From contig OU015569.1 of assembly GCA_907165135.1 (NCBI GenBank), positions 7,254,001 to 7,318,000 of the forward strand: 64,000 bases of DNA. Direction: 5' to 3'. The DNA is from Oikopleura dioica (Eukaryota; Animalia; Chordata). Below the pieces are notes generated by a model. The model ran no database searches, was not told where the DNA came from, and worked only from the letters and a program-made list of their open reading frames with translations. The translations under genes were made by a program, and so were the position numbers. Shown one piece after another: positions 1 to 12,822 of the stretch (position 1 is the first letter of the stretch; the number at the start of each line of letters is the position of its first letter).

Positions 1-403
1 TAAACTACATGTCGGTTTCTTGTCCCTCTGCATTATTGCAGATCAATCAAATAGGGTGAATATATCAGTACAAAGTTGTGAAAAATTAAGAAAATGAAAG
101 TCATCATTTTAATTAAAATTAAATCGATCTCCGTATACGATTTTTTTCGTTAGACAAGGATGGTTCAGTTTATCTATTTTCGTTACGCGAGCGGAGCTAA
201 AAACGTAATCAGGGACCATTTTACGATTCGTGGATGCGCGTTGTTCGCCGAAGTCTACAAGATTGTTCGAGTTTAAAGATAGAAAAGAACAAAAAGAAAC
301 AAATAAACGGCCTGCGGCGAGCGTATATTCTTATAAATCAGCTGATTCAGTTTTGAAGAGAAGAAAAAAGTGAAGACCAAAAAATGATGAAAAAATCTAA
401 AGG

Positions 404-3195
404 ATGAGAAAATTTTTGGCGCTGCTCGTGGCCATAGACGCATTCAATGACGAAATCCTGGGAAACAAAGACGATATCCTCAACGATGATATTAATTTGA
501 ATCGCAATTGCTACGTGAAACTTCCAAAGCAGTATAACACCAACATTTATCAGCCTTTTAGTAGCTTAAAAAATATCGATATCAGGTGAGAAAATAATGC
601 CTTGTAGTGGCTCGCTGAATCTTAAATCTAAACACTTTTTCAAGCTGACCCGAGATAATAACTATAAAATAACACTAAAATTACTCTACCAAATAAAAGA
701 TCTCGAAAATATACAATTTCAAATAGAGAAAGTTGTTGCGGTCCTCATTAAAAGTGGTTATTCAAAGCATAAAACAAAGCTTTGCCGGATTTCTATTTAA
801 CTTTATCAAAGGTGGTCTCTAAAATGCGAGAACAATGATGTTTTGACATTCTGCGGTGACATTTCAATAAATCTCCGGGAATCGAAAGAAAAGTATGTGC
901 CGTTTGACATTCGTGACGTTCAGCGACTTACAAAAAAGGAAGAATTTACGGTCGACAGCAGTTCTTGTTACTCAGCGGAAGCTGTAAAAAATAAGAGTTT
1001 AACAACAGATTCCGGATTACTACTAAATTTAAAGACGACGACGATTTCTTACACACAAAATGAACGTGCTTCTTTTGGAATATCTATAGGAACAGGGTTT
1101 TACACTCATTTCTAGTTGATCGGAAGTAACATCGGGAGTTCTGTTAACCCACTGCAGTGATCCAACGCGAAAAATCGGCGGAGAAAGATTTCCTTGAAAA
1201 GCTCTCTTCGCTCATCCAGAAGACGACAAATGATGGTTCAGCACGCGTGACCCTTCTTGGGAACCAGAGTGCAGCACTTGAGTCACACAGAACGCTTGGA
1301 TTCGAAGTCGATGTAAGGGCAGAGCCACTCTGCCCCACCCAAATACCCTTCTTCGACCTTAGCTTCTTAGCTGGGGATCAGTGCTGGCGCCAGGAAAGAG
1401 TCAGCTATACTAAACTATTCCACTGATAGTAAAGCGGGATCAGGCTTGGAAAGGACATGCCTGTCGTAACCTTCGGGGGGAGATTTTCGTCAGAAATAAT
1501 TGTTATCATATAAATGGTTCCCGCGTCGTTAAAGATGACTTCCAAAACAGGAGGCAAAGAGTCCGCGATGTCTTTGCTCGGGTCCATATAATTTAGAAAA
1601 CAAAGTTAATCATGTTTTATTGCTTCTAATCTGCTTTTTCATGAGAACAGATTTCATTCAAGAGCAGCTTGCCTCAATTAACCTTAGCCGAGGTTCACTC
1701 GAGTTAGACCAATTAAATGCCAGCAATAAATATTGTAGAAGACAGTTAATCTTAATAATTATTTACGCTGACCCGGCAAAAGCGTGATATTAACAAAACA
1801 ATCTTGGCAGAGTTAGATAATGATGGGAAAGTTGCGATCCATGGGAAATACTCCTCAGCTGTCTCGTCGTTCGTCATCATTTCTGTCGCTCAAGGAATTC
1901 TCCTAGCAGCTACACTCATTTTTACCATTCTTATTTTCAAGGTATGAGCTCTTAGCTTATTGAAATGACTCCGAAGATATTTTAAGTTAAACTATTATTA
2001 AAAGTTTGTTTTTATAGCGTCGACCCTACGATCATCAATTTTACAAGGCAGAAAAAAGTATCTATGGTTTCTCACTATTTGTGGCCTTCATGCGTTTTCT
2101 AATTTCCACGATGATTTGCTATCAATACCCGAAAAACTCCTTTGTGAACACGGAAGCCGTTATTCTGTTCTTCATTTTCGTTTATATCGACTTGTTGATT
2201 TATATTCTACACTTTCTCAATTTGCTCCGGCGAGTTTGGAGCAACAACATTATTGGTGGTCATTATTATCTGCCGCTTAGATATTTTGGACACTCGCTTC
2301 AAACTCTGCTTTCAACGATACCCAAGCACTGCGTAGTCTATATTTATTACTGGTAATATCCGCAGATCCACTTATTTATCTGTAACATTCACTTTCAGTC
2401 GGACGCTCCCTGTTTCTGGATACATACCTGTTGGAATAATGTTGCTTATTTGGACGGAACTCATCCTGATTCCGATGATTCTAGTGATTCAGTCGCTCGA
2501 TTTGCGCTTCCACTTACCTGATCTTCAAAAGGACAACACTAAAATATTTTCGTCGTTTGTTATCATCAACTATTTGCAAAGCGCTTCGCAGTTGTTTGTC
2601 AATCTCTCATTATTAGGCGCTACCTATTTAAGGTTTTGTGAATTTTGAAAAGTACCAAAAATCTAATTTTATAGGCAAATCATTGTCTCCTTTTACGCCG
2701 ACGCTGAGTTTACGGATTTGAAACCACCTGAAAGTTACTCGAATGACTCAATAGCTGGATCATCGCGTAAGAAACAATATCGTACACCGAAACGGATGGT
2801 TAATTTGTTTCTAGCTATAAATTTGGAGAATTTACCAGGTCTACAGGCTTTCGCACCAAGACTTGGAAGCTGCACGTCGCTCAGTAAGTTCAAATTCAAT
2901 GGAATGGGGATTAAAAACTGCTTCAACAATCTCGAAACAATTATCTTGGCTATTGCATTAGGAATTGGTCGAGAATTTCAAACTAAATGAAGCTAAAGGA
3001 GCTCAGATTCTGACCATGAGAAAAGTCAGCTTAGTACTCTCCGGATCAACGAGCATATACTTCGGTTGGTACTCTAGAAAAACCTTCCGAGATATATCGA
3101 AAAACTTCCGAGAGCTGTATGATAGAACAGAAGACAGACTTCCCATCAGAAACTACAATGCTGACTCTTACGGCCGTCGTGGGCATGGTGAATGA
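404..3195 (+). CDS. Multi-exon protein with a signal-peptide-like N-terminus and several hydrophobic C-terminal segments (adhesion-GPCR-like topology, family not recognised)
   Basis: MRKFLALLVAIDA at 404. Later exon fragments are hydrophobic (SSFVIISVAQGILLAATLIFTILIFK; EAVILFFIFVYI; LETIILAIALGIG). Exon structure only partly resolved. Confidence 0.4.
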
Positions 3196-3626
3196 GATTA
3201 AGATAATTTAAGCATTTTATTTTGCTTTGAATTTATTTATTATTCACCCGGAAAGAATGGAAATACCGGGGCACAGTCGGACAGTTTCTTCGGACAGAAT
3301 GACGTTTCAGTAAAAAAAATTGCTACCAATCGGACAGAAGCCGAACAATCCAAGTCCATGAACGTCGAGGTAGGAGCATTTTCATGAAAGTGTTGCCTTG
3401 CGAATACCCGGCGGACATATAAACCTGCACATTTTTATAAATTCATCCTGCAAGTTCAAAAGTCCAGATTCAACATTAAATAAAAGGACTATTTATTCGA
3501 AAAAAAAAAAGAAGTTAGAATTTAAATATAGAAGTTAGTAATGTTTGTAGAAATATCCCTAGGTTTGAAAGAAAAGTCGTAATGTACGGTCAAAGATTAG
3601 CAGTGAGAGGCGTGTCGACTGTCGGA

Positions 3627-4348
3627 TCAACAAACTGTCATTATTCCGTCAATACTGTCAAGTAAAGGCTTCTTTATATTAGCGGAACTTTCCTTAGTAT
3701 GATCGCTCGTGCCGAAAATTATCTCCCCAAAAGCTTTTGCAGTGGGACTACAACCAATTGCTAGAGAGCATGGACGACACTAAAAATACTAAGTTTTTGC
3801 TCATCGTTGAATTCTTTCCACCTGAAGACAATTCCAGCAATCAGGTCGAGTCGGATTTTTAAGACACCCCAGGCAAAAAGTGCACTTGTTACAGTGAGCG
3901 AACTGATCGCAAGTCCCTTTCAGACAAGCTACACAAGTCATACATGAAAGACATCTTTTAACCTGATCAGAAAATCTGAGCTAAGAACGAGCCGAAATTC
4001 TCATGACCAGTTACTAGTGCATTCTTCGCAAGGCCCGGTCCAAGTGTTCAACATGTACTCAAGGGGTTGACAAAAGAGGCGTCCAAAGAGACTTTAATTA
4101 GTAAGTGATAATTTATTTGTATTTTAGCAACCCTTACAGCGAATATTTGAGACAGTCGACGCAATGATAGCAGTTTCCGCAGCGCTGGACGCATTCGCCG
4201 CAAATCGCTTCGTCTTCGTGGTGCTCGTCGATTGTTACGCCAGTTTCGTTGAGGAGCTCTGAAGGTGCTAGCAGAACCTCCTTAATTTATGTACAATCAA
4301 ACCTTCAGCGGCAAGGTGCAAAATTAAAAAGTGGATTAAAAATTCCAT
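3627..4348 (-). CDS. Cys-rich protein (~175 aa, 24 Cys) with four CxxCxxCxxC motifs; not in the ORF track
   Basis: Manual splicing gives ...AICGECVQRCGNCYHCVDCLKYSLLFGRLFCQPLEYMLNTWTGPCEECTNFSDQVKRCLSCMTCVACLKGTCDQFAHCNKCTFCLGCLKNPTRPDCWNCLQCRPCSLAIGC...TVC*. The 5' end is uncertain (ATG 4348, or an upstream ATG at 4482). Confidence 0.7.
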
Positions 4349-5574: not shown

Positions 5575-5933
5575 TTACTCTTCGTCCTCTTTGTATAGTT
5601 CTGGAAGTTTGAGGCCAACCAAGTTTGCAGCTTCTTGAACAGAACGCTCTCCTTTTCCATGGTAGATTTTGATCAACTCTTGATGCTTCCTGGAATTTTC
5701 GAGCAAGCAGAGATAAGTCTCGGCGTCAACTACTGCTGCGCCAGGTTGTCGACAGTATCTGTTCTCTGAGATTTGGTTGACACTAAGAAACATTAATACT
5801 AAACTTATTCCATTTTTACTGACTCGAATAAATCTTGGGCGCGGTAGAATGCACTCCACTGTTCTTTGGGCCATCCCTTGTACAGCAGTCCGATTTCCCT
5901 CAACAACTTTCCCCTCACCGAATTCAAAGGCAT
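5575..5933 (-). CDS. FMC1: FMC1 (LYR-family, mitochondrial complex V assembly factor)
   Basis: TYLCLLENSRKHQELIKIYHGKGERSVQEAANLVGLKLP matches the FMC1 C-terminus. Exon 1 is MPLNSVRGKLLREIGLL, preceded by the acceptor ctccag|aATG. Confidence 0.9.
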
Positions 5934-6155
5934 TCTGGAGAAACAAAGATCAAAATTTGACGAAGTTGCCGTTATTATATTACTATATCAATGTGTAAGG
6001 AACGTGAAGAGAAAAAAAGCAATAAACGTATCCGTTGGGAGATATTGGAAAATCAGATATTCAGAAGGAAACATTTTGGGCAGGAATAATAGGAACGGAG
6101 AGTGCACACGATTTGAACTGTGCTTTGATAGTCTTTTGAAGGCACAAAATATAAC

Positions 6156-9100
6156 TCAACGGCGCTTTTTCTTCTTCGTTGGGCGCTTACGTCTGTTTGA
6201 AGTTTTCTTATTGTTGGAAGCGTCTTCGAAAGGCATTTTAGATTCAGAGTCGGAGACGGATTCAGGCGTGATCAGACAGCGCGAGTCATCGTAATCGTCG
6301 AATTCGGGTCCAAACCTATTGACAGGGCTTTGCTTCTTGGCTGAGATAACAGTAATTTATGAATTTACGCGATTGAAGCAATACCTATTACGCGACTCGA
6401 TTTGGGTGTGCCGATTGGGCCGAAAATAATTTCCTCGTCGCTTCCAGGAATATTCTCGTTGTCTGAATCTTCATCATCGTCGAGCAAGAGTTCTTCGCAA
6501 ATCTTTCGGCCGACGTTACTTGAATCAGCAGTGTCTGAGCTTGTAGAGAGCTGACGAACGAAAGAGATACCGCGCTGAATGAGATTTCCGGCCGTAGAAT
6601 TTGAGATAATTTCGGGAAGAGCTGAAATAGATTCAGTCAATCTTCGGGATGAAATTATTCGCTAACCTTGGAGGGGAAATTGTGGAAGGAGCTCTGGAAT
6701 TATTCGCGGCTCAAGATTACTGTAGTCATTGTCTGAGAGACCATGGAAACGATTCGAGAAAGAATCATCAGCAGCTTCATTGGAAAAGGAGTTTCTTGTG
6801 TCCGGAGCAGACGACCCAGATTTTGAAATTTTGAAACCTTCTTTAGCCAATCGTACTCTTTCGGATTCACGTCGGTCTGACTCAATTATCTCTAGCACCG
6901 ATATTAAAGAAGTCTTCTTGAGTTCCAGTGAAATTATGTCTATTTAAATGAGATTTGACCTCTTTTTCGTAATTTACCTGGTTCACTCCGAATAGGAACA
7001 TCTCTATGTATAGTCCGGGTGGACCCGTCAAGCATTAAACAAGATGAATCTTCGTCATTGGGGCGGTATCGGATTCTCTATAGGCTGGAATGATATCAAG
7101 ATTAGTTAATTCCATTTACCTTTGGACTCCTTTCTTGAAAAATGAGTTTAGTTTTGATTTTGTGAGAGTAAGGGATCATCTTTGGACTTTCGCCGGCCGA
7201 TTTGTTGGTTAAATTTGTAGACTTGAGAGCAGGCTGTAGCTTTGAGGCTTCTCTATCGTCATTCTCTTTGCTTGGAGTTATAATTTCTGGCTCCCTTTCG
7301 CTCTGATTATCTTTTTGGTTGATGTCGAACTCCTTCGGTACGGCTTGGACGATCGGGCTATTTGTAAGTAGAACTTCGTTATTCTCTGCGTTTTGAATAG
7401 CTGTAGACTTATTGAAATATCTATAATTTGGATTAAGGGACACACTCAAGCATAAAAGGGTCTCTTTTAAAATCCATTCCTGGATGTAAGCTCTGGCTGA
7501 GTTTCATATGCGACTCGGCGGACATTTGCAGCCAAGACGCTGCAGTAAGATTGGTCGAAGAAGATGGAGAAGAAAGGATCATTGGTTTTCTCGTAGTCAA
7601 GGCTAACCGCCTCATATGTGATCCGGAGAAGATTCGGAAACGCGCGTGACCAGTAGTGGAAAAAAGACTCCGATGTTTCGCCCAGAATTTCACGTGCTTC
7701 GCAAGTCAAATCGCGGAAATGGTGCCGCTTGTTGCGAAGAGCACGGAGCAAGTCTCTTATCCCATCATTATAATTTCGGAACTTTCGAAGATCTTCCTGT
7801 AATTCCGACTCCAAGCGAAGGCGCCAATCGCTTCCGGCGATTCGCTCGGAGTTCATCTCCAGATATTTTGTCATTTCGAAGTTCTCGATGTTTTTCTGTT
7901 CTTGCGGGTTTTGAGAGAGGCGATCAGATGTGAGCGCCAGAAATCGGATTTTCTTGTCCGAATTCCAAAATATTGGATGTTCCTGGACACCTTTCATTGG
8001 GAGCCGATGTTGGGGATCAGGTTGAATCATATTCAAAATGAGATTTTCATGAAGAGAAGAAATTCCTTTGAGGTCGTGTTTTCCTTTTGATTGTTTTATT
8101 CTGATATTGTTATTGCCAATCTCGATGTATTTACTAATATTTTTATCTTTGGTTATTTAATATCTACTGTAATATGTTATATAACAAAATTTGAATGAAA
8201 CATTCCTTGACGGATGCGAGCTTGGCGCATGAAGAACTCATGGCCGTAAGGATGCTTTCCGTCGGATAGTACGAAATAAAATACACATCCGAGCGAGAAG
8301 ATATCCACCGAATATGTAATTTTGCTGACATCACACTGAAATACTTCTGGTGCTGCCCAACCTTCCGTTCCGTGAAGATCCGTGACGGAAATCGAGTGTC
8401 TGCCTGGATTGACTTGCCGCGATAGCCTAGATTAGTAATAAATAGATAACGGAGCATTTAATTACCCGAAATCTGCGATTACAGCTCTACGACACCTATG
8501 TCTATTTCCGTAAGTGATGAGGATGTTACTTGGCTTGATGTCCCTATGGATAACTCCAAGAGAATGCAACTGCTCGACCCCGGCACAACAATGCTTCAAA
8601 ATCTCATCACGCGGGAGATCGCTTTCGAAGGTGTGCTGATTTTGTACGTAAAAATCTAAGTCTCCTTGACATAACTCGAGGGCGATGTAAATAAATTGTC
8701 GGTCCTTCTCCGAGCAAAAGTAGCGTAGCAAATTTGGATGGTCAGCCTGGCGCAGCAAGTCGATTTCTCTGTCTGCTAACTGATAGCTATCAACCAGCAA
8801 CCTCTTCAATAAAAATTCAAATAAAGCCGGAATCGATCGACTTACTTTGACTGCAACATCGCGCCCGTCGAAAGATCCGCGGAAGACGGAAGTTCCCATA
8901 CATCCTTTCCCGAGGAACTCACTCGGGTCAAAGGATATCTTTCCGATTGAATGCGGCGCTTTGGGGAAGATGTTTCGCCAAGAAAACTGCACAATAAGAA
9001 TCAGAAAGAGAAGGAGAACAAGCGCCTAAAATTGTTAGTAACTGAGTACAACGCTTACTGATACCTGAAGAACATGAACGTTGGATAGCGTTTCCCGAGT

Positions 9101-11030
9101 AATGTCAATGGCGGTCAAGAATTTACTCTCACTCTTCGAGCCTTTTTTAGGATTACTTCGCTTTTGGCGATTGCGATCGCGCCGCTCACGCCGTCGCTCC
9201 TTGTGCTTTCGGCGTCGTTTTTCGCGTTGCATGTGCAAATTAATGAAAATCTTTTCTAACTAAGGTTCACCAGATGATTTCATGCAGACAACAATGAGCA
9301 AACAACTATTAGCTTAATTTAATGATAAGTTGATGTCTATAACCCATCACAATCAAAGCAAAAATCAAATGGAATATCCATGCACATAAAATGATGATAC
9401 GGATGATGATTTCGCATGCAAGTGTCTCAGAAGAGCTGAAGATCAGAACGAAATATTTTAAAGATAGAGCCTAAATCCTATTCCTTGCAATCGAGCAAAT
9501 ATCCCCATATGCTCACTTTCCAAAAGATTATTATCTGAATTAGGTAAAACCTCAACTTGTACGGCCGCATCTTTTCGATCGCTTGCTGAGGCACCCGGGA
9601 GATCGCGTCCGGGAATTTGGCTCGGGGCAGGGCAGTTGGTCAAGCTCTCGCTACCGGGGTTGTTGTTCAGATTCGGTCCAGAAGATTCATCAGGAGAGCC
9701 GCATACATCCGTGCTCTTCCCTGGTAAGAGGCGTACTCCATCAGAAGCGTATTTTGTCGGCTTCAAGTCGGTAACAGGCAGAGGATAGTAGCCCAACGGA
9801 TTCGTTCCAGAATCTGTCGATGACGGCATTTCCGGCAGCATCATGTAATTAGGCGCCATACTATTTAAAACATAGAGCTTTTTTCCATAGAGACCGACGT
9901 AAACCTGCAGACTACGTGTGTCTTTAGGGCGAAAAGGTTCAAAGTAGCCGGAGTCGAAGGACTGGAAGGGAAACTTGAAGAGACCTCCATTGTAAATATT
10001 GTAAGCTCCAATGATCGGATATCCAAAATTAGCTTGCCACTTGATAGTGTTGTCAAGAAAGTTTTTAGCGACGATTGTTCCGCAGTTTGAACAGACTTCG
10101 ATACGTATTTGAGGATTGCTCAGTTCTAACTCTTTTGCTGCGAGCTCCGAGTAGGTTAAATTCCATTTGACCTCATTAGTGTTACTGTCGAAAATTGTGA
10201 GTGAGTAGACAGTGTAGCCCACGAATAATTTCTCGTGATGAAGCGGAATCGGCGTTGGAATTTTAGATTCTCCACCACCTTGGTCGATTTTTTGAATAAC
10301 GTCTCCCGTCGTTGAATCCAAGATCTGCCAGTTGTCCTTTTTGTCGCCGACGTATAGCTTACCGTCTTCTGCTTTTGTTGGAGAGCTTTCGATCATTTCT
10401 TGAATCGTCATTCCCATTTTTCGAAGCTCTGCCTGCTCGCCATAATCTGTTTCAGAACGATCGAAGTAGTAAATGGATCCATCTGATGGATCAGGCACGA
10501 AGCTCAAGTCGAAGTTGTCAGCGTTGGGTTCTTTGTATTGCGGAAACCAGTCTCTTTTTATCACAGTGTCCCATTTAGTCGATCCGTCCAGGGGATCCAC
10601 TGCATGGAGTCGGCCGTCAATCGTCTGCAGCAAAAGCGGGCCACTTAGAGAGCTGGGACTTAGTTCCGGGAGGCTAAGCCACTCGTCGCCTATGTATTAC
10701 ATTGTTACTTGAGTGCTCGCAGGAGACATCAATAATCAACGAGAAATCACATGTTTATTCTAATATTCGCTCTCTACTGAAACAATCGAATGAAATAATC
10801 AGATGTGTTCTATTCAAGAAAGTGCCTATTTAGAATGAAAACAACGTGCATGAGGTTACCTGGCAGCGTTCGCGCCTTTTTCCGAATAACTTGGATATTT
10901 TAAAAATTTGAAATTTAAAGAAAAAGCTGAGATTTGCAGAGAAACACATACCTGATTCGTCATCATAATCATCTGCAAGGTCCCCTGCAGAGAGCAAGGC
11001 TAGAACTAATGAAACAATAAATTTCAGCAT
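6156..11030 (-). CDS. ERN1: IRE1 (ER luminal domain, TM, Ser/Thr kinase, KEN RNase) with a long C-terminal extension
   Basis: Signal peptide MLKFIVSLVLALLSA (11030); luminal domain LLQTIDGRLHAVD...W; kinase LGKGCMGT / VAVK / HRDIKPSNIL / DFG; KEN motif DLLRALRNKRHH. Spliced frame continues to a stop at 6156. Confidence 0.95.
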
Positions 11031-11405
11031 GATGGATATTTCTTTTTCGTTAAAAATCTGCTTTCTTGCGAATTCTTTCTCCGACTTCCATTCTAACGAT
11101 GTGCGCCGTTAGATCTCTCTTACGAGTCAAAAAGGAATCCGGCGGGCTACTTCAGAGCTTTCGAGTTTCTAACGCTCAGAGGAACGAATGCGCTCGGTGA
11201 CGCGGCGCGCCTAGTTAGGCGACGTGGCTCAGCGCCAGGTTCTATTATAGCGCACGAAATATTGCAAAATGGAATTATTGAATTTGGGGACTCGCATTTT
11301 GTAGACAGAAGATCATTTAATGTGAACTTTGCTGAAGTAACTGGCAGGACAATAAATAGTTTACTCTAAATTAACTATTGAAGCAGCAGGCAACAGTTTT
11401 TCTTC

Positions 11406-12822
11406 TTAGACGACTTTGATAGGATCGCTGTCGAGTTCAGAAACAATGAATTGGATATCTCTCTTCTTCACCATATCATTTTCCTGAAATGCGTAGATTA
11501 GATTCTTATTATCCTTGAAAAACGAGCAATAAGATTTTACGAGTTTATTCACACTGATTAATCGTCTGTTTAGACAATGAGTGTTTTGTGCTTTTTCCTA
11601 CCATTATTTTCGTCTTGAATGACTCCAGAAAGCCTCGCTCCGTGTTAGAATGCTCCGCGAGAATAACCGATGTATTATTCTCCTGCGCATCTAATGCTTC
11701 GTGGTGGCCCATTTCTCCAGTAACCCACAAGTCTACTTTGCCAGCATGGCTCAAGACAGAGGCGCCAGAACCAGCGCAGACCGCAATCGTACTCACTAAC
11801 CCGTCAGGACCCTTAATTTTAAGATTAAGAAAAGACAGCTGTAACGAGAGCGATAGTCATATTTGATTAATATACGAACATTTTACCGTATCATTCGCTG
11901 TAACCAAACGCAAGTTCGGAAGCTTGAGATGTCTCTTGGTGAGATCAACCACCTCGGAAAGCTTCATCGGCTCCGTAAGAACACCTTTACGACCCATCCC
12001 TGTACCTTCAACAGGGATAGAACCCAAGCAAACAAGCTGGAAATTGTCGATCGAAGACAAGTACTTTTCGGAGAGTTTAGGAAGGTCGCGTTTAAATATC
12101 CGACCACTTAGCTCACCAGCGTCTGAGATTTTCGTCTTGTTGAAATTCTTTCGGAAAGCTTTTCTGTCGACAGAGTCTCTGGCTTGTCCTGAGATCTCGT
12201 ACATTTCTCGAGTATCGAAAGTTGGAGATATCGGTACATGTTTCGAATGTCCGAGAATGCCCTCTAAAAATTTTATTATTCGGTGACCAAAAGAACTATG
12301 CAATAACCGATAAGCCAAGCGTTGACACCTTCTGCCCATGCATCGTGTGCAGTGTGTGGCGAATAAATAGCGATGTTGTTCTTCAGACATTCAGTCACAA
12401 TTCTGTCTTTCCAATTGTCTTGTGAAATGCGCTTGAACTCACGAAAAAGCGGAGGATGATATGAAATGATTAAATTCGCTTTTCCAGGCTTTGAAAGTCA
12501 AACCTTTCTTATTTGATAATGTACTTTTCGTCAAAATGGACAATTAAAAGATGTAAGATTACTGATTCAATAAAGCTGATTATACAGTTGTACACTTATG
12601 ATAAAAATTGATGATCGTACTACGATCATCGTAGAAAAATAAAAGCCTCCCTTTGAAGTCGACGGCCTCTTTCATAACCCGGGAAGTGAGATCGTTAGTC
12701 AACAGCACTCGCTCAACAAAACAATCCGCCGGTTCAAGAAGGAGTCCAACATTGTCCCACTTGGCAGCGTGCCTTGTAGGAGCTAGTTTCTCAAGAACAT
12801 CACAGAAGGCACGCAGTTTCAT
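11406..12822 (-). CDS. NIF3L1: NIF3-like protein 1 (DUF34)
   Basis: WDNVGLLLEP, LLTNDLT, IAVCAGSG, TGEMGHHEALDA, HSNTERGFL. Confidence 0.95.

What the first reader, a model, noticed from the sequence alone, without database searches (positions are those of the whole stretch)
6156..7480. IRE1 appears to carry a ~360-aa cytosolic tail after the RNase domain, ending in an NLS-like motif
The apparent stop at 7467 lies inside a GA-AG intron (7479 to 7421: TCC AG|GAATGG...TTATAG|A TAT). Four further GT-AG introns keep the frame open through Ser/Asp/Glu-rich exons to NRRKRPTKKKRR* at 6156. Vertebrate IRE1 ends shortly after the KEN domain. The downstream exons have no nearby in-frame ATG, which argues against a separate gene. 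Retention of the intron would produce a short canonical IRE1, so two isoforms are possible.
Basis: partly seen in the sequence, partly recalled or inferred. Interest (0 to 1): 0.7.

Follow-up and report, generated by a model that had tools for sequence, protein, structure and literature searches.

The report
IRE1 with long spliced-on tail
The stress-sensor gene IRE1 of the tunicate Oikopleura dioica really does continue, through an unusual GA-AG intron, into five more exons that add a conserved, mostly unstructured tail of about 350 residues ending in a cluster of basic residues; public gene models already show this tail, but I found no paper describing it.

Summary
Observation confirmed and interpretation supported. 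The window is O. dioica OKI2018_I69 (X-specific region), gene g15400. All three GenBank models (CAG5098135-7, 1250-1260 aa) match the window exons at 100% and contain the junction ...PELTS|R|YFNKS, made by removing the 59-nt GA-AG intron 7479-7421.

No read or contig covers that junction in the window's own lineage. Four spliced cDNA contigs from two other O. dioica lineages (L011, L014, L016, L017) carry the homologous junction in one ORF. That ORF runs from the kinase/KEN domains, and in L016 from the start codon, to ...KKKKRR*.

Two cDNA contigs (L012, L013) use an acceptor 35 nt further into the first tail exon. This shifts the frame and stops after about 11 codons, giving a tail-less IRE1. 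Two isoforms therefore exist, made by an alternative 3' splice site. No contig showed intron retention.

No in-frame ATG is conserved in the first tail exon. Tail dN/dS is 0.20-0.28, against 0.03-0.05 for KEN. A more distant relative (L002) has the tail motif downstream of KEN behind the same CCAG|GAATG donor.

The tail has no Pfam or PDB match and is predicted mostly disordered. Its end fits both a classical NLS and a KKXX ER-retrieval signal. Function is inferred only. The scan has not noted this elsewhere.

The parts
6156..11030 (-). Whole IRE1 gene (OKI2018_I69.XSR.g15400): signal peptide, luminal propeller, TM segment, kinase, KEN RNase and tail
   Evidence: tblastn of P0014 on the window gives 100% exon matches from 11030 to 6159. 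Pfam on P0015 finds Pkinase at 499-749 and Ribonuc_2-5A at 756-876.
7480..8083 (-). Exon carrying the KEN (RNase) domain; its last bases are ...ACATCCAG
   Evidence: Pfam PF06479, E 8e-29.
7421..7479 (-). 59-nt GA-AG intron (CAG|GAATGG...TTATAG|A) that contains the apparent IRE1 stop TAA at 7469-7467
   Evidence: Sequence. It is removed in GenBank models t1-t3. The homologous intron (65 nt) is removed in lineage-B cDNAs L011, L016 and L017 relative to genomic L015/L008. The AG|GAA donor context fits the O. dioica GA-AG consensus (PMC7072748).
7120..7420 (-). Tail exon T1 (100 codons plus 1 base). It has a variable N-part and the conserved end SPK(M/I)IPYSHKIKTKLIFQ(E/D)(R/K)SPK
   Evidence: 100% match to P0014 905-1004. 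The frame stays open in all lineages despite many indels. A 3-nt in-frame indel at 7291-7289 separates the window from haplotype L001. dN/dS of the N-part is 0.28.
7386..7387 (-). Candidate distal acceptor AG (AAAACGCAG|AGAATAA). Using it would give ...TSRE* with stop TAA at 7381-7379, a short tail-less IRE1
   Evidence: Inferred by homology. cDNA L012 (lineage B) and L013 (another lineage) join the KEN exon to the equivalent site 35 nt into T1 and stop after about 11 codons. Window sequence. Not observed in the window's own lineage.
7078..7119 (-). 42-nt GT-AG intron between T1 and T2
   Evidence: Metatranscriptome contig (run X1, 95-99% alike) joins 7120|7077 with ends CT..AC on the + strand.
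6978..7077 (-). Tail exon T2 (RIRYRPN...CLMLDGS...DVPIRSEP)
   Evidence: 73-76% identical in other lineages. Homologous stretch in L002. The only AF2 segment with pLDDT near 80 lies here, a small hairpin.
6667..6939 (-). Tail exon T3. GenBank models start it at 6891; sister-lineage cDNAs include the upstream 16 residues
6385..6621 (-). Tail exon T4 (PEIISNS.AG.L.QRG.S.VRQLSTSSDT, an acidic run, then SDEE.IF.PIGTPKSSRVI)
   Evidence: 61-71% identical in other lineages.
6156..6340 (-). Tail exon T5 with stop TGA at 6158-6156
   Evidence: X1 contig 6050-6325 covers it and at least 106 nt of 3' UTR. Raw RNA reads of a divergent lineage map on 6158-6215.
6159..6197 (-). C-terminal basic cluster NRRKRPTKKKKRR. 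It matches the classical NLS pattern and a KKXX-COOH dilysine motif
   Evidence: Identical in lineages B and D, and ...TKNKKRC in L014. K[KR]x[KR] matches at 1255-1257 of P0015.
5931..5937 (-). Spliced-leader acceptor (CAG|A) and ATG (5933-5931) of the next gene, a protein kinase
   Evidence: Loose read ends at 5937 are the reverse complement of the O. dioica spliced leader (SL sequence in PMC6883708). Pfam on L011:2857-3834 finds Pkinase.

Best explanation
**What it is.** This is the canonical ER-stress sensor IRE1 of Oikopleura dioica. Its primary transcript does not end at the TAA at 7467.

**Long isoform.** A U2-type but non-canonical GA-AG intron (7479-7421, donor CAG|GAATGG) is spliced out. 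This joins the KEN exon in phase 2 to five further exons (T1-T5, 7420-6156). The product is about 1250-1265 aa. The kinase/RNase module is followed by a cytosolic extension of about 350 residues that is conserved under purifying selection, rich in Ser/Asp/Glu and predicted mostly disordered. It ends in ...NNKKTSNRRKRPTKKKKRR-COOH.

**Short isoform.** A second acceptor 35 nt inside T1 shifts the frame and stops translation within 2-11 codons. That gives an IRE1 with a canonical-length C-terminus. The choice of 3' splice site therefore decides whether the enzyme carries the tail.

**Shown:** the exon structure; the junction in cDNA of sister lineages and in the GenBank models of this genome; the alternative acceptor in sister lineages; conservation.

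**Inferred:** the same two isoforms occur in the window's lineage. The tail most likely acts as a flexible targeting or docking arm whose basic end binds a sorting receptor. My split is:
- importin, with bias toward the nuclear envelope or inner nuclear membrane: about 0.3;
- COPI through KKXX, for ER retrieval: about 0.25;
- other docking or regulatory roles: the rest.

The confidence given is for the structural claim (one gene, spliced-on tail, tail-less isoform by a distal acceptor), not for the function of the tail.
For: **GenBank models of this genome.** P0014, P0015 and P0016 (CAG5098136/5/7) are 100% identical to the window exons and contain ...ELTSRYFNKSTAIQ... and ...KKKKRR. They were built with RNA-Seq intron hints (PMC8008620).

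**cDNA contigs with the long junction.**
- L011 (JGI) has ORF 3-2666.
- L014 (JGI) has ORF 26-2629.
- L016 (Logan) has the full ORF 65-3835, 1256 aa.
- L017 (Logan) also carries the junction.
-.
- L011 matches genomic L015 at 100% in exon blocks, with the 65-nt GA-AG intron removed.

**cDNA contigs with the distal acceptor and early stop.** L012 and L013.

**Conserved splice sites.** Donor (A/C)AG|GA(A/C)(T/A)GGATTTTA and acceptor AATCCAA...AG|A(T/C)ATTT are kept in three genomic lineages, with introns of 59, 65 and 62 nt. AG|GAA fits the published O. dioica GA-AG context (PMC7072748).

**No conserved ATG in T1.**
- The window has ATG at codon 81, lineage B at about codon 24, and lineage C none.
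- L002 has none before the conserved motif.
- A stop sits 1-2 codons before the acceptor in B and C.
- The spliced leader has no ATG.

**Selection.** dN/dS is 0.20-0.28 for the tail, including the N-part of T1, and 0.03-0.05 for KEN. A 3-nt in-frame indel lies in T1.

**Distant relative L002.** LPYSHKIKTKLIWKDKLSPK and T2/T3-like sequence lie downstream of KEN on the same strand (E 1e-5). A CCAG|GAATGA donor and an in-frame GA..AG interval of 628 nt precede it.

**Tail properties.** There is no Pfam, PDB or Atlas match. AF2 mean pLDDT is 45. Polar or disorder-promoting residues make up 72%, and the last 26 residues carry a net charge of +10.
Against: - No read or contig from the window's own lineage crosses 7480|7420. 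Depth is zero over 7342-7609, and the raw-read runs turned out to be a divergent lineage.
- Contigs cannot give isoform ratios. They also cannot exclude additional SL-trans-spliced tail-only RNAs.
- The 2010 OdB3 annotation treats the tail as a separate 333-aa protein (CBY09062.1).
- The 59-nt gap is within the range of at most 60 bp used to call O. dioica operons (PMC7986045).
- For L013 no genomic sequence is available, so a 35-nt genomic deletion cannot be strictly excluded there.
- The functional reading (NLS or KKXX) rests on pattern matches and on a shallow five-sequence AF2 model.
Confidence: 0.92

Rival explanations
1. The five downstream exons are a separate gene. It would be the second cistron of an operon, resolved by spliced-leader addition at the AG at 7421, and IRE1 would end at TAA 7467.
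For: - O. dioica has many operons with gaps of at most 60 bp (PMC7986045).
- The OdB3 annotation lists the tail as its own protein, CBY09062.1.
- The next gene downstream is SL-trans-spliced.
- cDNA contigs L011 and L013 run across neighbouring genes, so the region is transcribed polycistronically.
Against: - Four cDNA contigs join KEN to T1 in frame.
- No ATG is conserved in T1. Lineage C and L002 have none before the conserved PYSHKIKTKLI motif.
- The SL has no ATG.
- T1 is under purifying selection from its first codon.
- The T1 frame opens exactly at the acceptor in lineages B and C.
- The OdB3 split coincides with an apparent 1-nt difference in an A-run, which gives ...VIQKSREERKRNSCT* in CBY09061.1 (this is an inference).
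Confidence: 0.03
2. The long isoform is a minor by-product. The functional IRE1 would be the short form made by the distal acceptor or by intron retention, and the tail would be rarely translated.
For: - Two of six cDNA contigs (L012, L013) show the distal acceptor.
- In the window the short form would end just two codons after the joint.
- All other known IRE1s end soon after KEN (established knowledge of human, yeast, fly and worm IRE1).
Against: - Tail dN/dS is 0.20-0.28 over dS of 0.35-0.53.
- Blocks are near-identical across lineages whose synonymous sites are saturated against the window (pS 0.69-0.79).
- Tail motifs are conserved in a relative whose KEN is only 47% identical.
- All three RNA-Seq-hinted GenBank isoforms carry the tail.
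Confidence: 0.08
3. The fused ORF is an artefact: chimeric assembly of two transcripts or an over-extended gene prediction.
For: Short-read transcript assemblers can merge overlapping neighbours, and L011 and L013 do run into neighbouring genes.
Against: - The joint removes exactly a GA..AG interval and restores the frame.
- It appears in four contigs from at least three data sets and two lineages.
- A chimera of unspliced neighbours would keep the 65 nt, and these contigs lack it.
Confidence: 0.01

Closest known systems
Canonical IRE1 (human ERN1/IRE1alpha, yeast Ire1p)
   Same: Both are type I ER membrane proteins with a luminal propeller-like sensor, a TM segment, a Ser/Thr kinase and a KEN RNase. 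The RNKRHH motif is present. Pfam finds Pkinase and Ribonuc_2-5A.
   Different: Known IRE1s end within a few to about 15 residues after KEN (established knowledge). This one adds about 350 residues encoded by five extra exons, and has a splice-site switch that removes them.
Yeast Ire1p nuclear localisation sequence (Goffin et al. 2006, cited in PMC4490496)
   Same: An IRE1 protein carrying a basic importin-type signal. The idea is that some IRE1 acts at the nuclear envelope or inner nuclear membrane.
   Different: From my recollection of that paper, the yeast NLS lies in the linker between the TM segment and the kinase. Here the basic cluster is at the extreme C-terminus of a long extension. 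There is no sequence homology, and function here is untested.
NLS plus disordered-linker sorting signal of Heh1/Heh2 and Pom121 (PMC4569319)
   Same: A membrane protein with a long, predicted disordered stretch that ends in a strong basic cluster. That paper shows the signal works on either side of the TM segment and needs a long linker.
   Different: Here a folded kinase/RNase module of about 430 residues sits between the membrane and the linker. The cluster is monopartite-looking, not the bipartite IBB-like Heh2 NLS. Nothing has been tested.
KKXX-COOH dilysine ER-retrieval signal of type I membrane proteins (COPI binding)
   Same: The topology is type I with a cytosolic C-terminus. Lysines at -3 and -4 from the C-terminus are kept in all four lineages seen (KKRR, KKRC).
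   Different: Classical KKXX tails are short and close to the membrane. Here the motif is about 800 residues from the TM segment, within a longer basic run that also matches an NLS.
GA-AG introns of O. dioica (PMC7072748; PMC8008620)
   Same: The donor has AG upstream and A downstream (AG|GAA). The intron is short (59-65 nt). This is a frequent non-canonical class in this species.
   Different: Nothing unusual as an intron. Its interest is only that it hides the apparent stop codon and is paired with two acceptors.

Membership tests
IRE1 (ER-stress kinase/endoribonuclease) | Protein kinase domain followed directly by a KEN (Ribonuc_2-5A) domain | tested here: met
   Pfam on P0015 finds Pkinase at 499-749 (E 2e-41) and PF06479 at 756-876 (E 2e-27). 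The window exons match as well.
IRE1 (ER-stress kinase/endoribonuclease) | N-terminal signal peptide, luminal sensor domain and a single TM segment | tested here: inconclusive
   There is a hydrophobic N-terminus (MLKFIVSLVLALLSAG), weak propeller hits (PF13570, PF13360), and a hydrophobic stretch ALVLLLFLILIV before the kinase. No dedicated TM or signal predictor was run.
IRE1 (ER-stress kinase/endoribonuclease) | RNase catalytic motif of the KEN domain (R-N-K-x-H-H block) | tested here: met
   LRALRNKRHHFRD is present in the window exon and in all lineages. This was read from the sequence; activity was not tested.
Classical importin-alpha NLS | K-(K/R)-x-(K/R) basic core in an accessible, disordered region | tested here: met
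   KKKK, KKKR and KKRR at 1255-1257 of P0015. AF2 pLDDT is about 50-60 in the last 20 residues, with no secondary structure. This is a pattern match only.
Classical importin-alpha NLS | Binding to importin and nuclear or inner-nuclear-membrane accumulation that depends on the motif | not testable with these tools
   Needs localisation or binding experiments.
KKXX dilysine ER-retrieval signal | Lysines at -3 and -4 (or -5) from the free C-terminus of a cytosolic tail of a type I membrane protein | tested here: met
   ...KKRR-COOH in the window and in lineages B and D, and ...KKRC-COOH in L014. This is a pattern match only.
KKXX dilysine ER-retrieval signal | COPI binding and retrieval | not testable with these tools
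   Needs experiments.
Heh2/Pom121-type NLS-linker-TM sorting signal | Intrinsically disordered linker of well over 100 residues between the TM segment and the NLS | tested here: inconclusive
   The tail is predicted mostly disordered (273 of 365 residues with pLDDT < 50), but from only five aligned sequences. A folded kinase/RNase also lies between the TM segment and the tail.
O. dioica operon downstream cistron | Own start codon close to an SL acceptor, and an SL-trans-spliced 5' end | tested here: not met
   No conserved ATG in T1, and none at all in lineage C or before the motif in L002. cDNAs cis-splice this acceptor to the KEN exon. SL addition at 7420 itself could not be tested because no reads cover it.

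The most novel reading that the evidence does not exclude
Appendicularian IRE1 has acquired a splice-selectable disordered arm whose terminal basic cluster is a working importin signal. In that case the long isoform would be drawn to the nuclear envelope or inner nuclear membrane, or a cleaved cytosolic fragment would enter the nucleus, while the short isoform would stay a conventional ER enzyme. IRE1 RNase activity would then be partitioned between cytoplasmic and nuclear-side RNA substrates by choice of a 3' splice site. This would sit in a genome that also shows a KEN-domain expansion and, according to untested notes of this scan, an unusual XBP1.
Probability: 0.15. Interest if true: 0.75.

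Novelty: new variant of a known kind. Interest (0 to 1): 0.42.

Why it matters
IRE1 is the most conserved branch of the unfolded-protein response, and its architecture is usually taken as fixed: sensor, TM segment, kinase, RNase, end.

Here a chordate lineage has added a conserved extension of about 350 residues with a terminal sorting-type motif, together with an alternative acceptor that makes a tail-less form. This gives a natural system for asking where in the cell IRE1 has to be, which bears on the old question of nuclear-side versus cytoplasmic XBP1/HAC1 splicing. It also lets one ask what can be attached to the RNase end without harming it.

On the practical side, the case shows that apparent stop codons in O. 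dioica can sit inside GA-AG introns. It explains why the 2010 OdB3 annotation split this gene in pieces, one of which is an 'uncharacterised protein' (CBY09062.1) that is really the IRE1 tail.

The gene model is already in GenBank and the function is untested, so this is a moderate finding and not a striking one.

Tried and rejected
**Reads (the only read-laying run).** The three raw-read runs come from a divergent lineage, 88-95% alike. Only conserved patches mapped, and nothing covered 7342-7609. The key joint was therefore not tested directly in this lineage.

**First protein searches.** Single-exon queries under the length filter found only prokaryote-style ORF calls on genomic contigs. 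They were still useful because they led to L001-L006.

**Programmed frameshift in place of splicing.** Rejected, because in lineages B and C the T1 frame is closed by a stop just before the acceptor.

**A stand-alone tail protein made from the short-isoform mRNA.** The candidate start is the ATG in the +1 frame of the KEN exon (AATGTCC). That ORF is open in the window, B, D and E, but it is closed by TAA at the donor in lineage C. I take it as chance.

**Poly(A) signal as a discriminator.**
- No AATAAA or ATTAAA lies in the 59-nt intron.
- None lies after the true stop either.
- The test is therefore uninformative.

**Intron lengths.** The lengths 59, 62 and 65 nt are all 2 mod 3. No explanation is needed beyond chance (about 1 in 9).

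**Homology of the tail.** There were no matches in any of these:
- Pfam;
- PDB sequence profile;
- ESM Atlas by features.

The AF2 model was too poor for a fold search.

**L006/P0004.** The ORF runs about 65 residues past KEN in frame in another relative, but the contig ends too soon to tell whether this is a tail.

**Joined model.** The window's joined exon model was never sent to any search tool. Searches used single exons by reference or natural records (GenBank proteins, cDNA contigs). A script joined the exons once, only to count stops, and neither printed nor saved the result.

**Motif guesses from memory.** I considered an LIR-like SDEE(I/M)IFxPI, a basophilic kinase site RQLS and an NES-like LEPRLIPELL. 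These are not tested and are not claimed.
Full report
**1. What the sequence shows**

All features lie on the minus strand.
- The ORF that carries the KEN RNase domain (Pfam PF06479, E 8e-29) ends ...ETQPELTSRNGF*, with TAA at 7469-7467.
- Ten bases upstream of that stop lies CAG|GAATGG.
- Fifty-nine bases after the cut lies TTATAG|ATATTTC.
- Removing 7479-7421 joins ACA TCC AG to A TAT TTC and keeps the frame.
- Five exons follow: T1 7420-7120, T2 7077-6978, T3 6939-6667, T4 6621-6385 and T5 6340-6156.
- They are separated by GT-AG introns of 42, 38, 45 and 44 nt.
- The frame ends in NRRKRPTKKKKRR* (TGA 6158-6156).

Three details needed correcting: the number of lysines; one non-conserved in-frame ATG in T1, at 7179; and an alternative T3 acceptor that GenBank uses.

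**2. Identity of the window**

The last allowed word-index protein search used a natural cDNA-encoded protein as query, restricted to its tail. It returned P0014, 'Oidioi.mRNA.OKI2018_I69.XSR.g15400.t2' of Oikopleura dioica.

P0014 is 100% identical to every window exon, from 11030 to 6159. Its cluster holds three isoforms of 1260, 1252 and 1250 aa (CAG5098135-7). They differ only near the N-terminus, and all contain ...PELTSRYFNKSTAIQ... and ...KKKKRR.

That annotation was made with AUGUSTUS using RNA-Seq intron and exon hints, and it reports 11% non-canonical introns (PMC8008620). The fused model is therefore already public for this very genome.

I found no paper that mentions it. 'Oikopleura' plus 'IRE1' returns only the HEPN survey, which notes a KEN-domain expansion.

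**3. Reads**

The single read-laying run gave partial evidence only.
- A metatranscriptome contig 95-99% alike joins 7120|7077. This confirms the T1/T2 intron.
- Another contig covers T5 and 106 nt of 3' UTR.
- The three raw-read runs labelled with the species are from a divergent lineage, 88-95% alike. They mapped only on conserved patches, including the basic C-terminal end (6158-6215).
- Nothing covered 7342-7609. The key joint was therefore not tested in this lineage.
- Reads at 5937 carry the reverse complement of the O. dioica spliced leader (sequence in PMC6883708). The next gene, a protein kinase, is therefore SL-trans-spliced.

**4. Comparative genomics**

Exon-by-exon searches led to genomic contigs of the same lineage and of two divergent O. 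dioica lineages.
- L001 is the same lineage, 98.3% identical.
- L008, L009 and L010 (= L015) are lineage B, the Bergen type, because they cluster with the OdB3 proteins.
- L007 is lineage C. Searches cover all of these.

All lineages keep the donor (A/C)AG|GA(A/C)(T/A)GGATTTTA and the acceptor AATCCAA..AG|A(T/C)ATTT. The introns are 59, 65 and 62 nt. The AG|GAA context matches the published GA-AG consensus for this species (PMC7072748).

Four points argue for a cis-spliced internal exon:
- In lineages B and C the T1 frame is closed by a stop one or two codons before the acceptor. In all three lineages it stays open for 95-100 codons after the acceptor, despite many indels.
- The first residues after the acceptor, R-(Y/H)-(F/L)-N-x-S-x-x-I-Q-N-x-E, are conserved.
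- In-frame ATGs in T1 are not conserved. The window has one at codon 81, lineage B at about codon 24, and lineage C has none.
- In lineage B the stop inside the intron is lost (TAA to TAT).

A more distant relative (L002) has a KEN domain only 47% identical. It carries LPYSHKIKTKLIWKDKLSPK followed by T2- and T3-like sequence, about 700 nt downstream of KEN on the same strand (tblastn E 1e-5). No in-frame ATG precedes the motif. Its KEN ORF ends with the same CCAG|GAATG, and a GA...AG interval of 628 nt is in frame with the tail ORF. This last splice is inferred only.

**5. Transcripts**

A scan of JGI contigs with the PYSHKIK motif returned spliced cDNA contigs.
- L011 (lineage B) matches genomic L015 at 100% in exon blocks. 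It reads ...GTTTCAAG|ATATTTCAATAAC, which is exactly the predicted joint, inside one ORF of 887 codons running to KKKKRR*.
- L014 (another lineage) does the same.
- Two Logan contigs found through cluster membership, L016 and L017, also carry the joint. L016 holds the full 1256-aa ORF from the start codon.
- L012 (lineage B) and L013 (a further lineage, with the full IRE1 ORF of 916 aa) instead join the KEN exon to AAAATCAAG|AGAAGA, 35 nt into T1. This shifts the frame and stops after 11 codons, as ...SREERKRNSCT* and ...SREERKRSCCT*.

The window has the same distal site (AAAACGCAG|AGAATAA). Using it would give ...TSRE*. A tail-less isoform therefore exists, made by an alternative 3' splice site. 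No contig showed intron retention.

**6. Selection**

Among lineages B, D and E (dS 0.35-0.53), dN/dS is 0.03-0.05 for the KEN exon. It is 0.28 for the variable N-part of T1, and 0.20-0.25 from SPKIIPYSH to the end.

Against lineage B, the window's synonymous sites are saturated, while tail pN is 0.15-0.36. A 3-nt in-frame indel separates the window from haplotype L001 inside T1.

The tail is a translated, constrained sequence, though it evolves faster than the catalytic core.

**7. Why older data looked like two genes**

The OdB3 annotation has two proteins at this locus.
- CBY09061.1 (435 aa) ends ...SRYFNNSSVIQKSREERKRNSCT*.
- CBY09062.1 (333 aa) starts at the lineage-B methionine of HKMVDSE.

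The first already uses the GA-AG intron and then changes frame. That fits one extra A in an A-run of that assembly. This is an inference, because I could not read that assembly.

**8. What the tail is**
- No Pfam family matches it.
- No PDB relative was found by profile.
- No Atlas neighbour was found by features.
- AF2 with a five-sequence alignment gives mean pLDDT 45. It predicts only a small hairpin in T2 and three short helices.
- Polar or disorder-promoting residues make up 72% of the tail.
- An acidic stretch has net charge -8, and the last 26 residues have net charge +10.

Conserved blocks:
- SPKIIPYSHKIKTKLIFQDKSPKRIRYRPN
- CLMLDGS..IH.DVPIRS
- IESHRLESER
- SNRF.GL...NLEPR(L/I)IPELLPQ
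- PEIISNS.AG.L.QRG.S.VRQLSTSSDT
- SDEE.IF.PIGTPKSSRVI
- LEDA.NNKKTSNRRKRPTKKKKRR-COOH

The terminal cluster fits K-(K/R)-x-(K/R), the classical NLS core. It fits KKXX-COOH, the COPI dilysine retrieval signal, equally well, and that signal makes sense for a type I ER protein. The lysines at -3 and -4 survive in L014, where neighbouring residues changed (KKRC).

Precedents for the NLS reading exist.
- Yeast Ire1p has an NLS, and IRE1 has been reported at the inner nuclear membrane (cited in PMC4490496).
- An NLS plus a long disordered linker sorts membrane proteins to the inner nuclear membrane. It works on either side of the TM segment (PMC4569319).
- Against this, a folded kinase/RNase sits between the membrane and the linker here.

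I cannot discriminate between these readings with the tools at hand. The function stated is an inference.

**9. Verdict**

- The isoform switch is an alternative acceptor, not intron retention.
- 'NLS-like' is one of two equally good pattern readings of the C-terminus.

The gene model is already in GenBank, so the structural finding is not new to databases. As biology it is an undescribed variant of IRE1. I rate its interest as moderate.

**Rule compliance**

Noticed in passing
window 5931-5937 (minus strand); L011:2857-3837: The next gene downstream is a protein kinase of about 326 aa. It receives the O. dioica spliced leader at CAG|AATG: loose read ends are the reverse complement of CCATTTTTGAGTCCGATTTCGATTGTCTAA. 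No AATAAA or ATTAAA lies between the IRE1 tail stop (6156) and this acceptor.
   Followed up: partly
L013:1-5425; window about 5600-12400: cDNA contig L013 runs through a NIF3/DUF34 gene, the whole IRE1 and the start of the downstream kinase. L011 runs from IRE1 into the kinase. This suggests a polycistronic NIF3-IRE1-kinase transcript, that is, an operon candidate, with gaps of about 200-370 nt, longer than the 60 bp usually used to call operons.
   Followed up: partly
window 6891-6977 (minus strand): The GenBank models g15400.t1-t3 splice T2 to an acceptor at CTAG|AGATAATT (exon start 6891), not to the 38-nt GT-AG intron ending at 6940. This drops 16 residues (DIISLELKKTSLISVL) whose homologues are present in all sister-lineage cDNAs. 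It is either an alternative acceptor or an annotation choice.
   Followed up: partly
P0017 / P0018 (CBY09062.1, CBY09061.1; OdB3 assembly): The 2010 Bergen annotation splits this IRE1 into pieces. The 'uncharacterised protein' E4XBT7 is the IRE1 tail. CBY09061.1 ends in a frame-shifted ...VIQKSREERKRNSCT*, consistent with one extra A in an A-run of that assembly.
   Followed up: partly
window 7523-7525 (minus strand ATG in AATGTCC); L012:615-1676; L013:3751-4821: In the short-isoform mRNAs an ATG in the +1 frame of the KEN exon opens an ORF that reads through the distal joint into the whole tail (353-356 aa). That frame is closed by TAA at the donor in lineage C (L007), so it is probably chance.
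   Followed up: yes
L006:261-950 (P0004): In another marine relative (KEN 45% identical) the KEN ORF continues in frame for about 65 residues of acidic, polar sequence (...ETQNLPYSS...) with no stop. The contig ends too soon to see whether this is an intron-less version of the tail.
   Followed up: no
window 7421-7479; L008:683-747; L007:190-251: The GA-AG intron is 59, 65 and 62 nt in three lineages, always 2 mod 3. Its first 12 bases (GA.(T/A)GGATTTTA) are nearly invariant, while the rest is not alignable.
   Followed up: no
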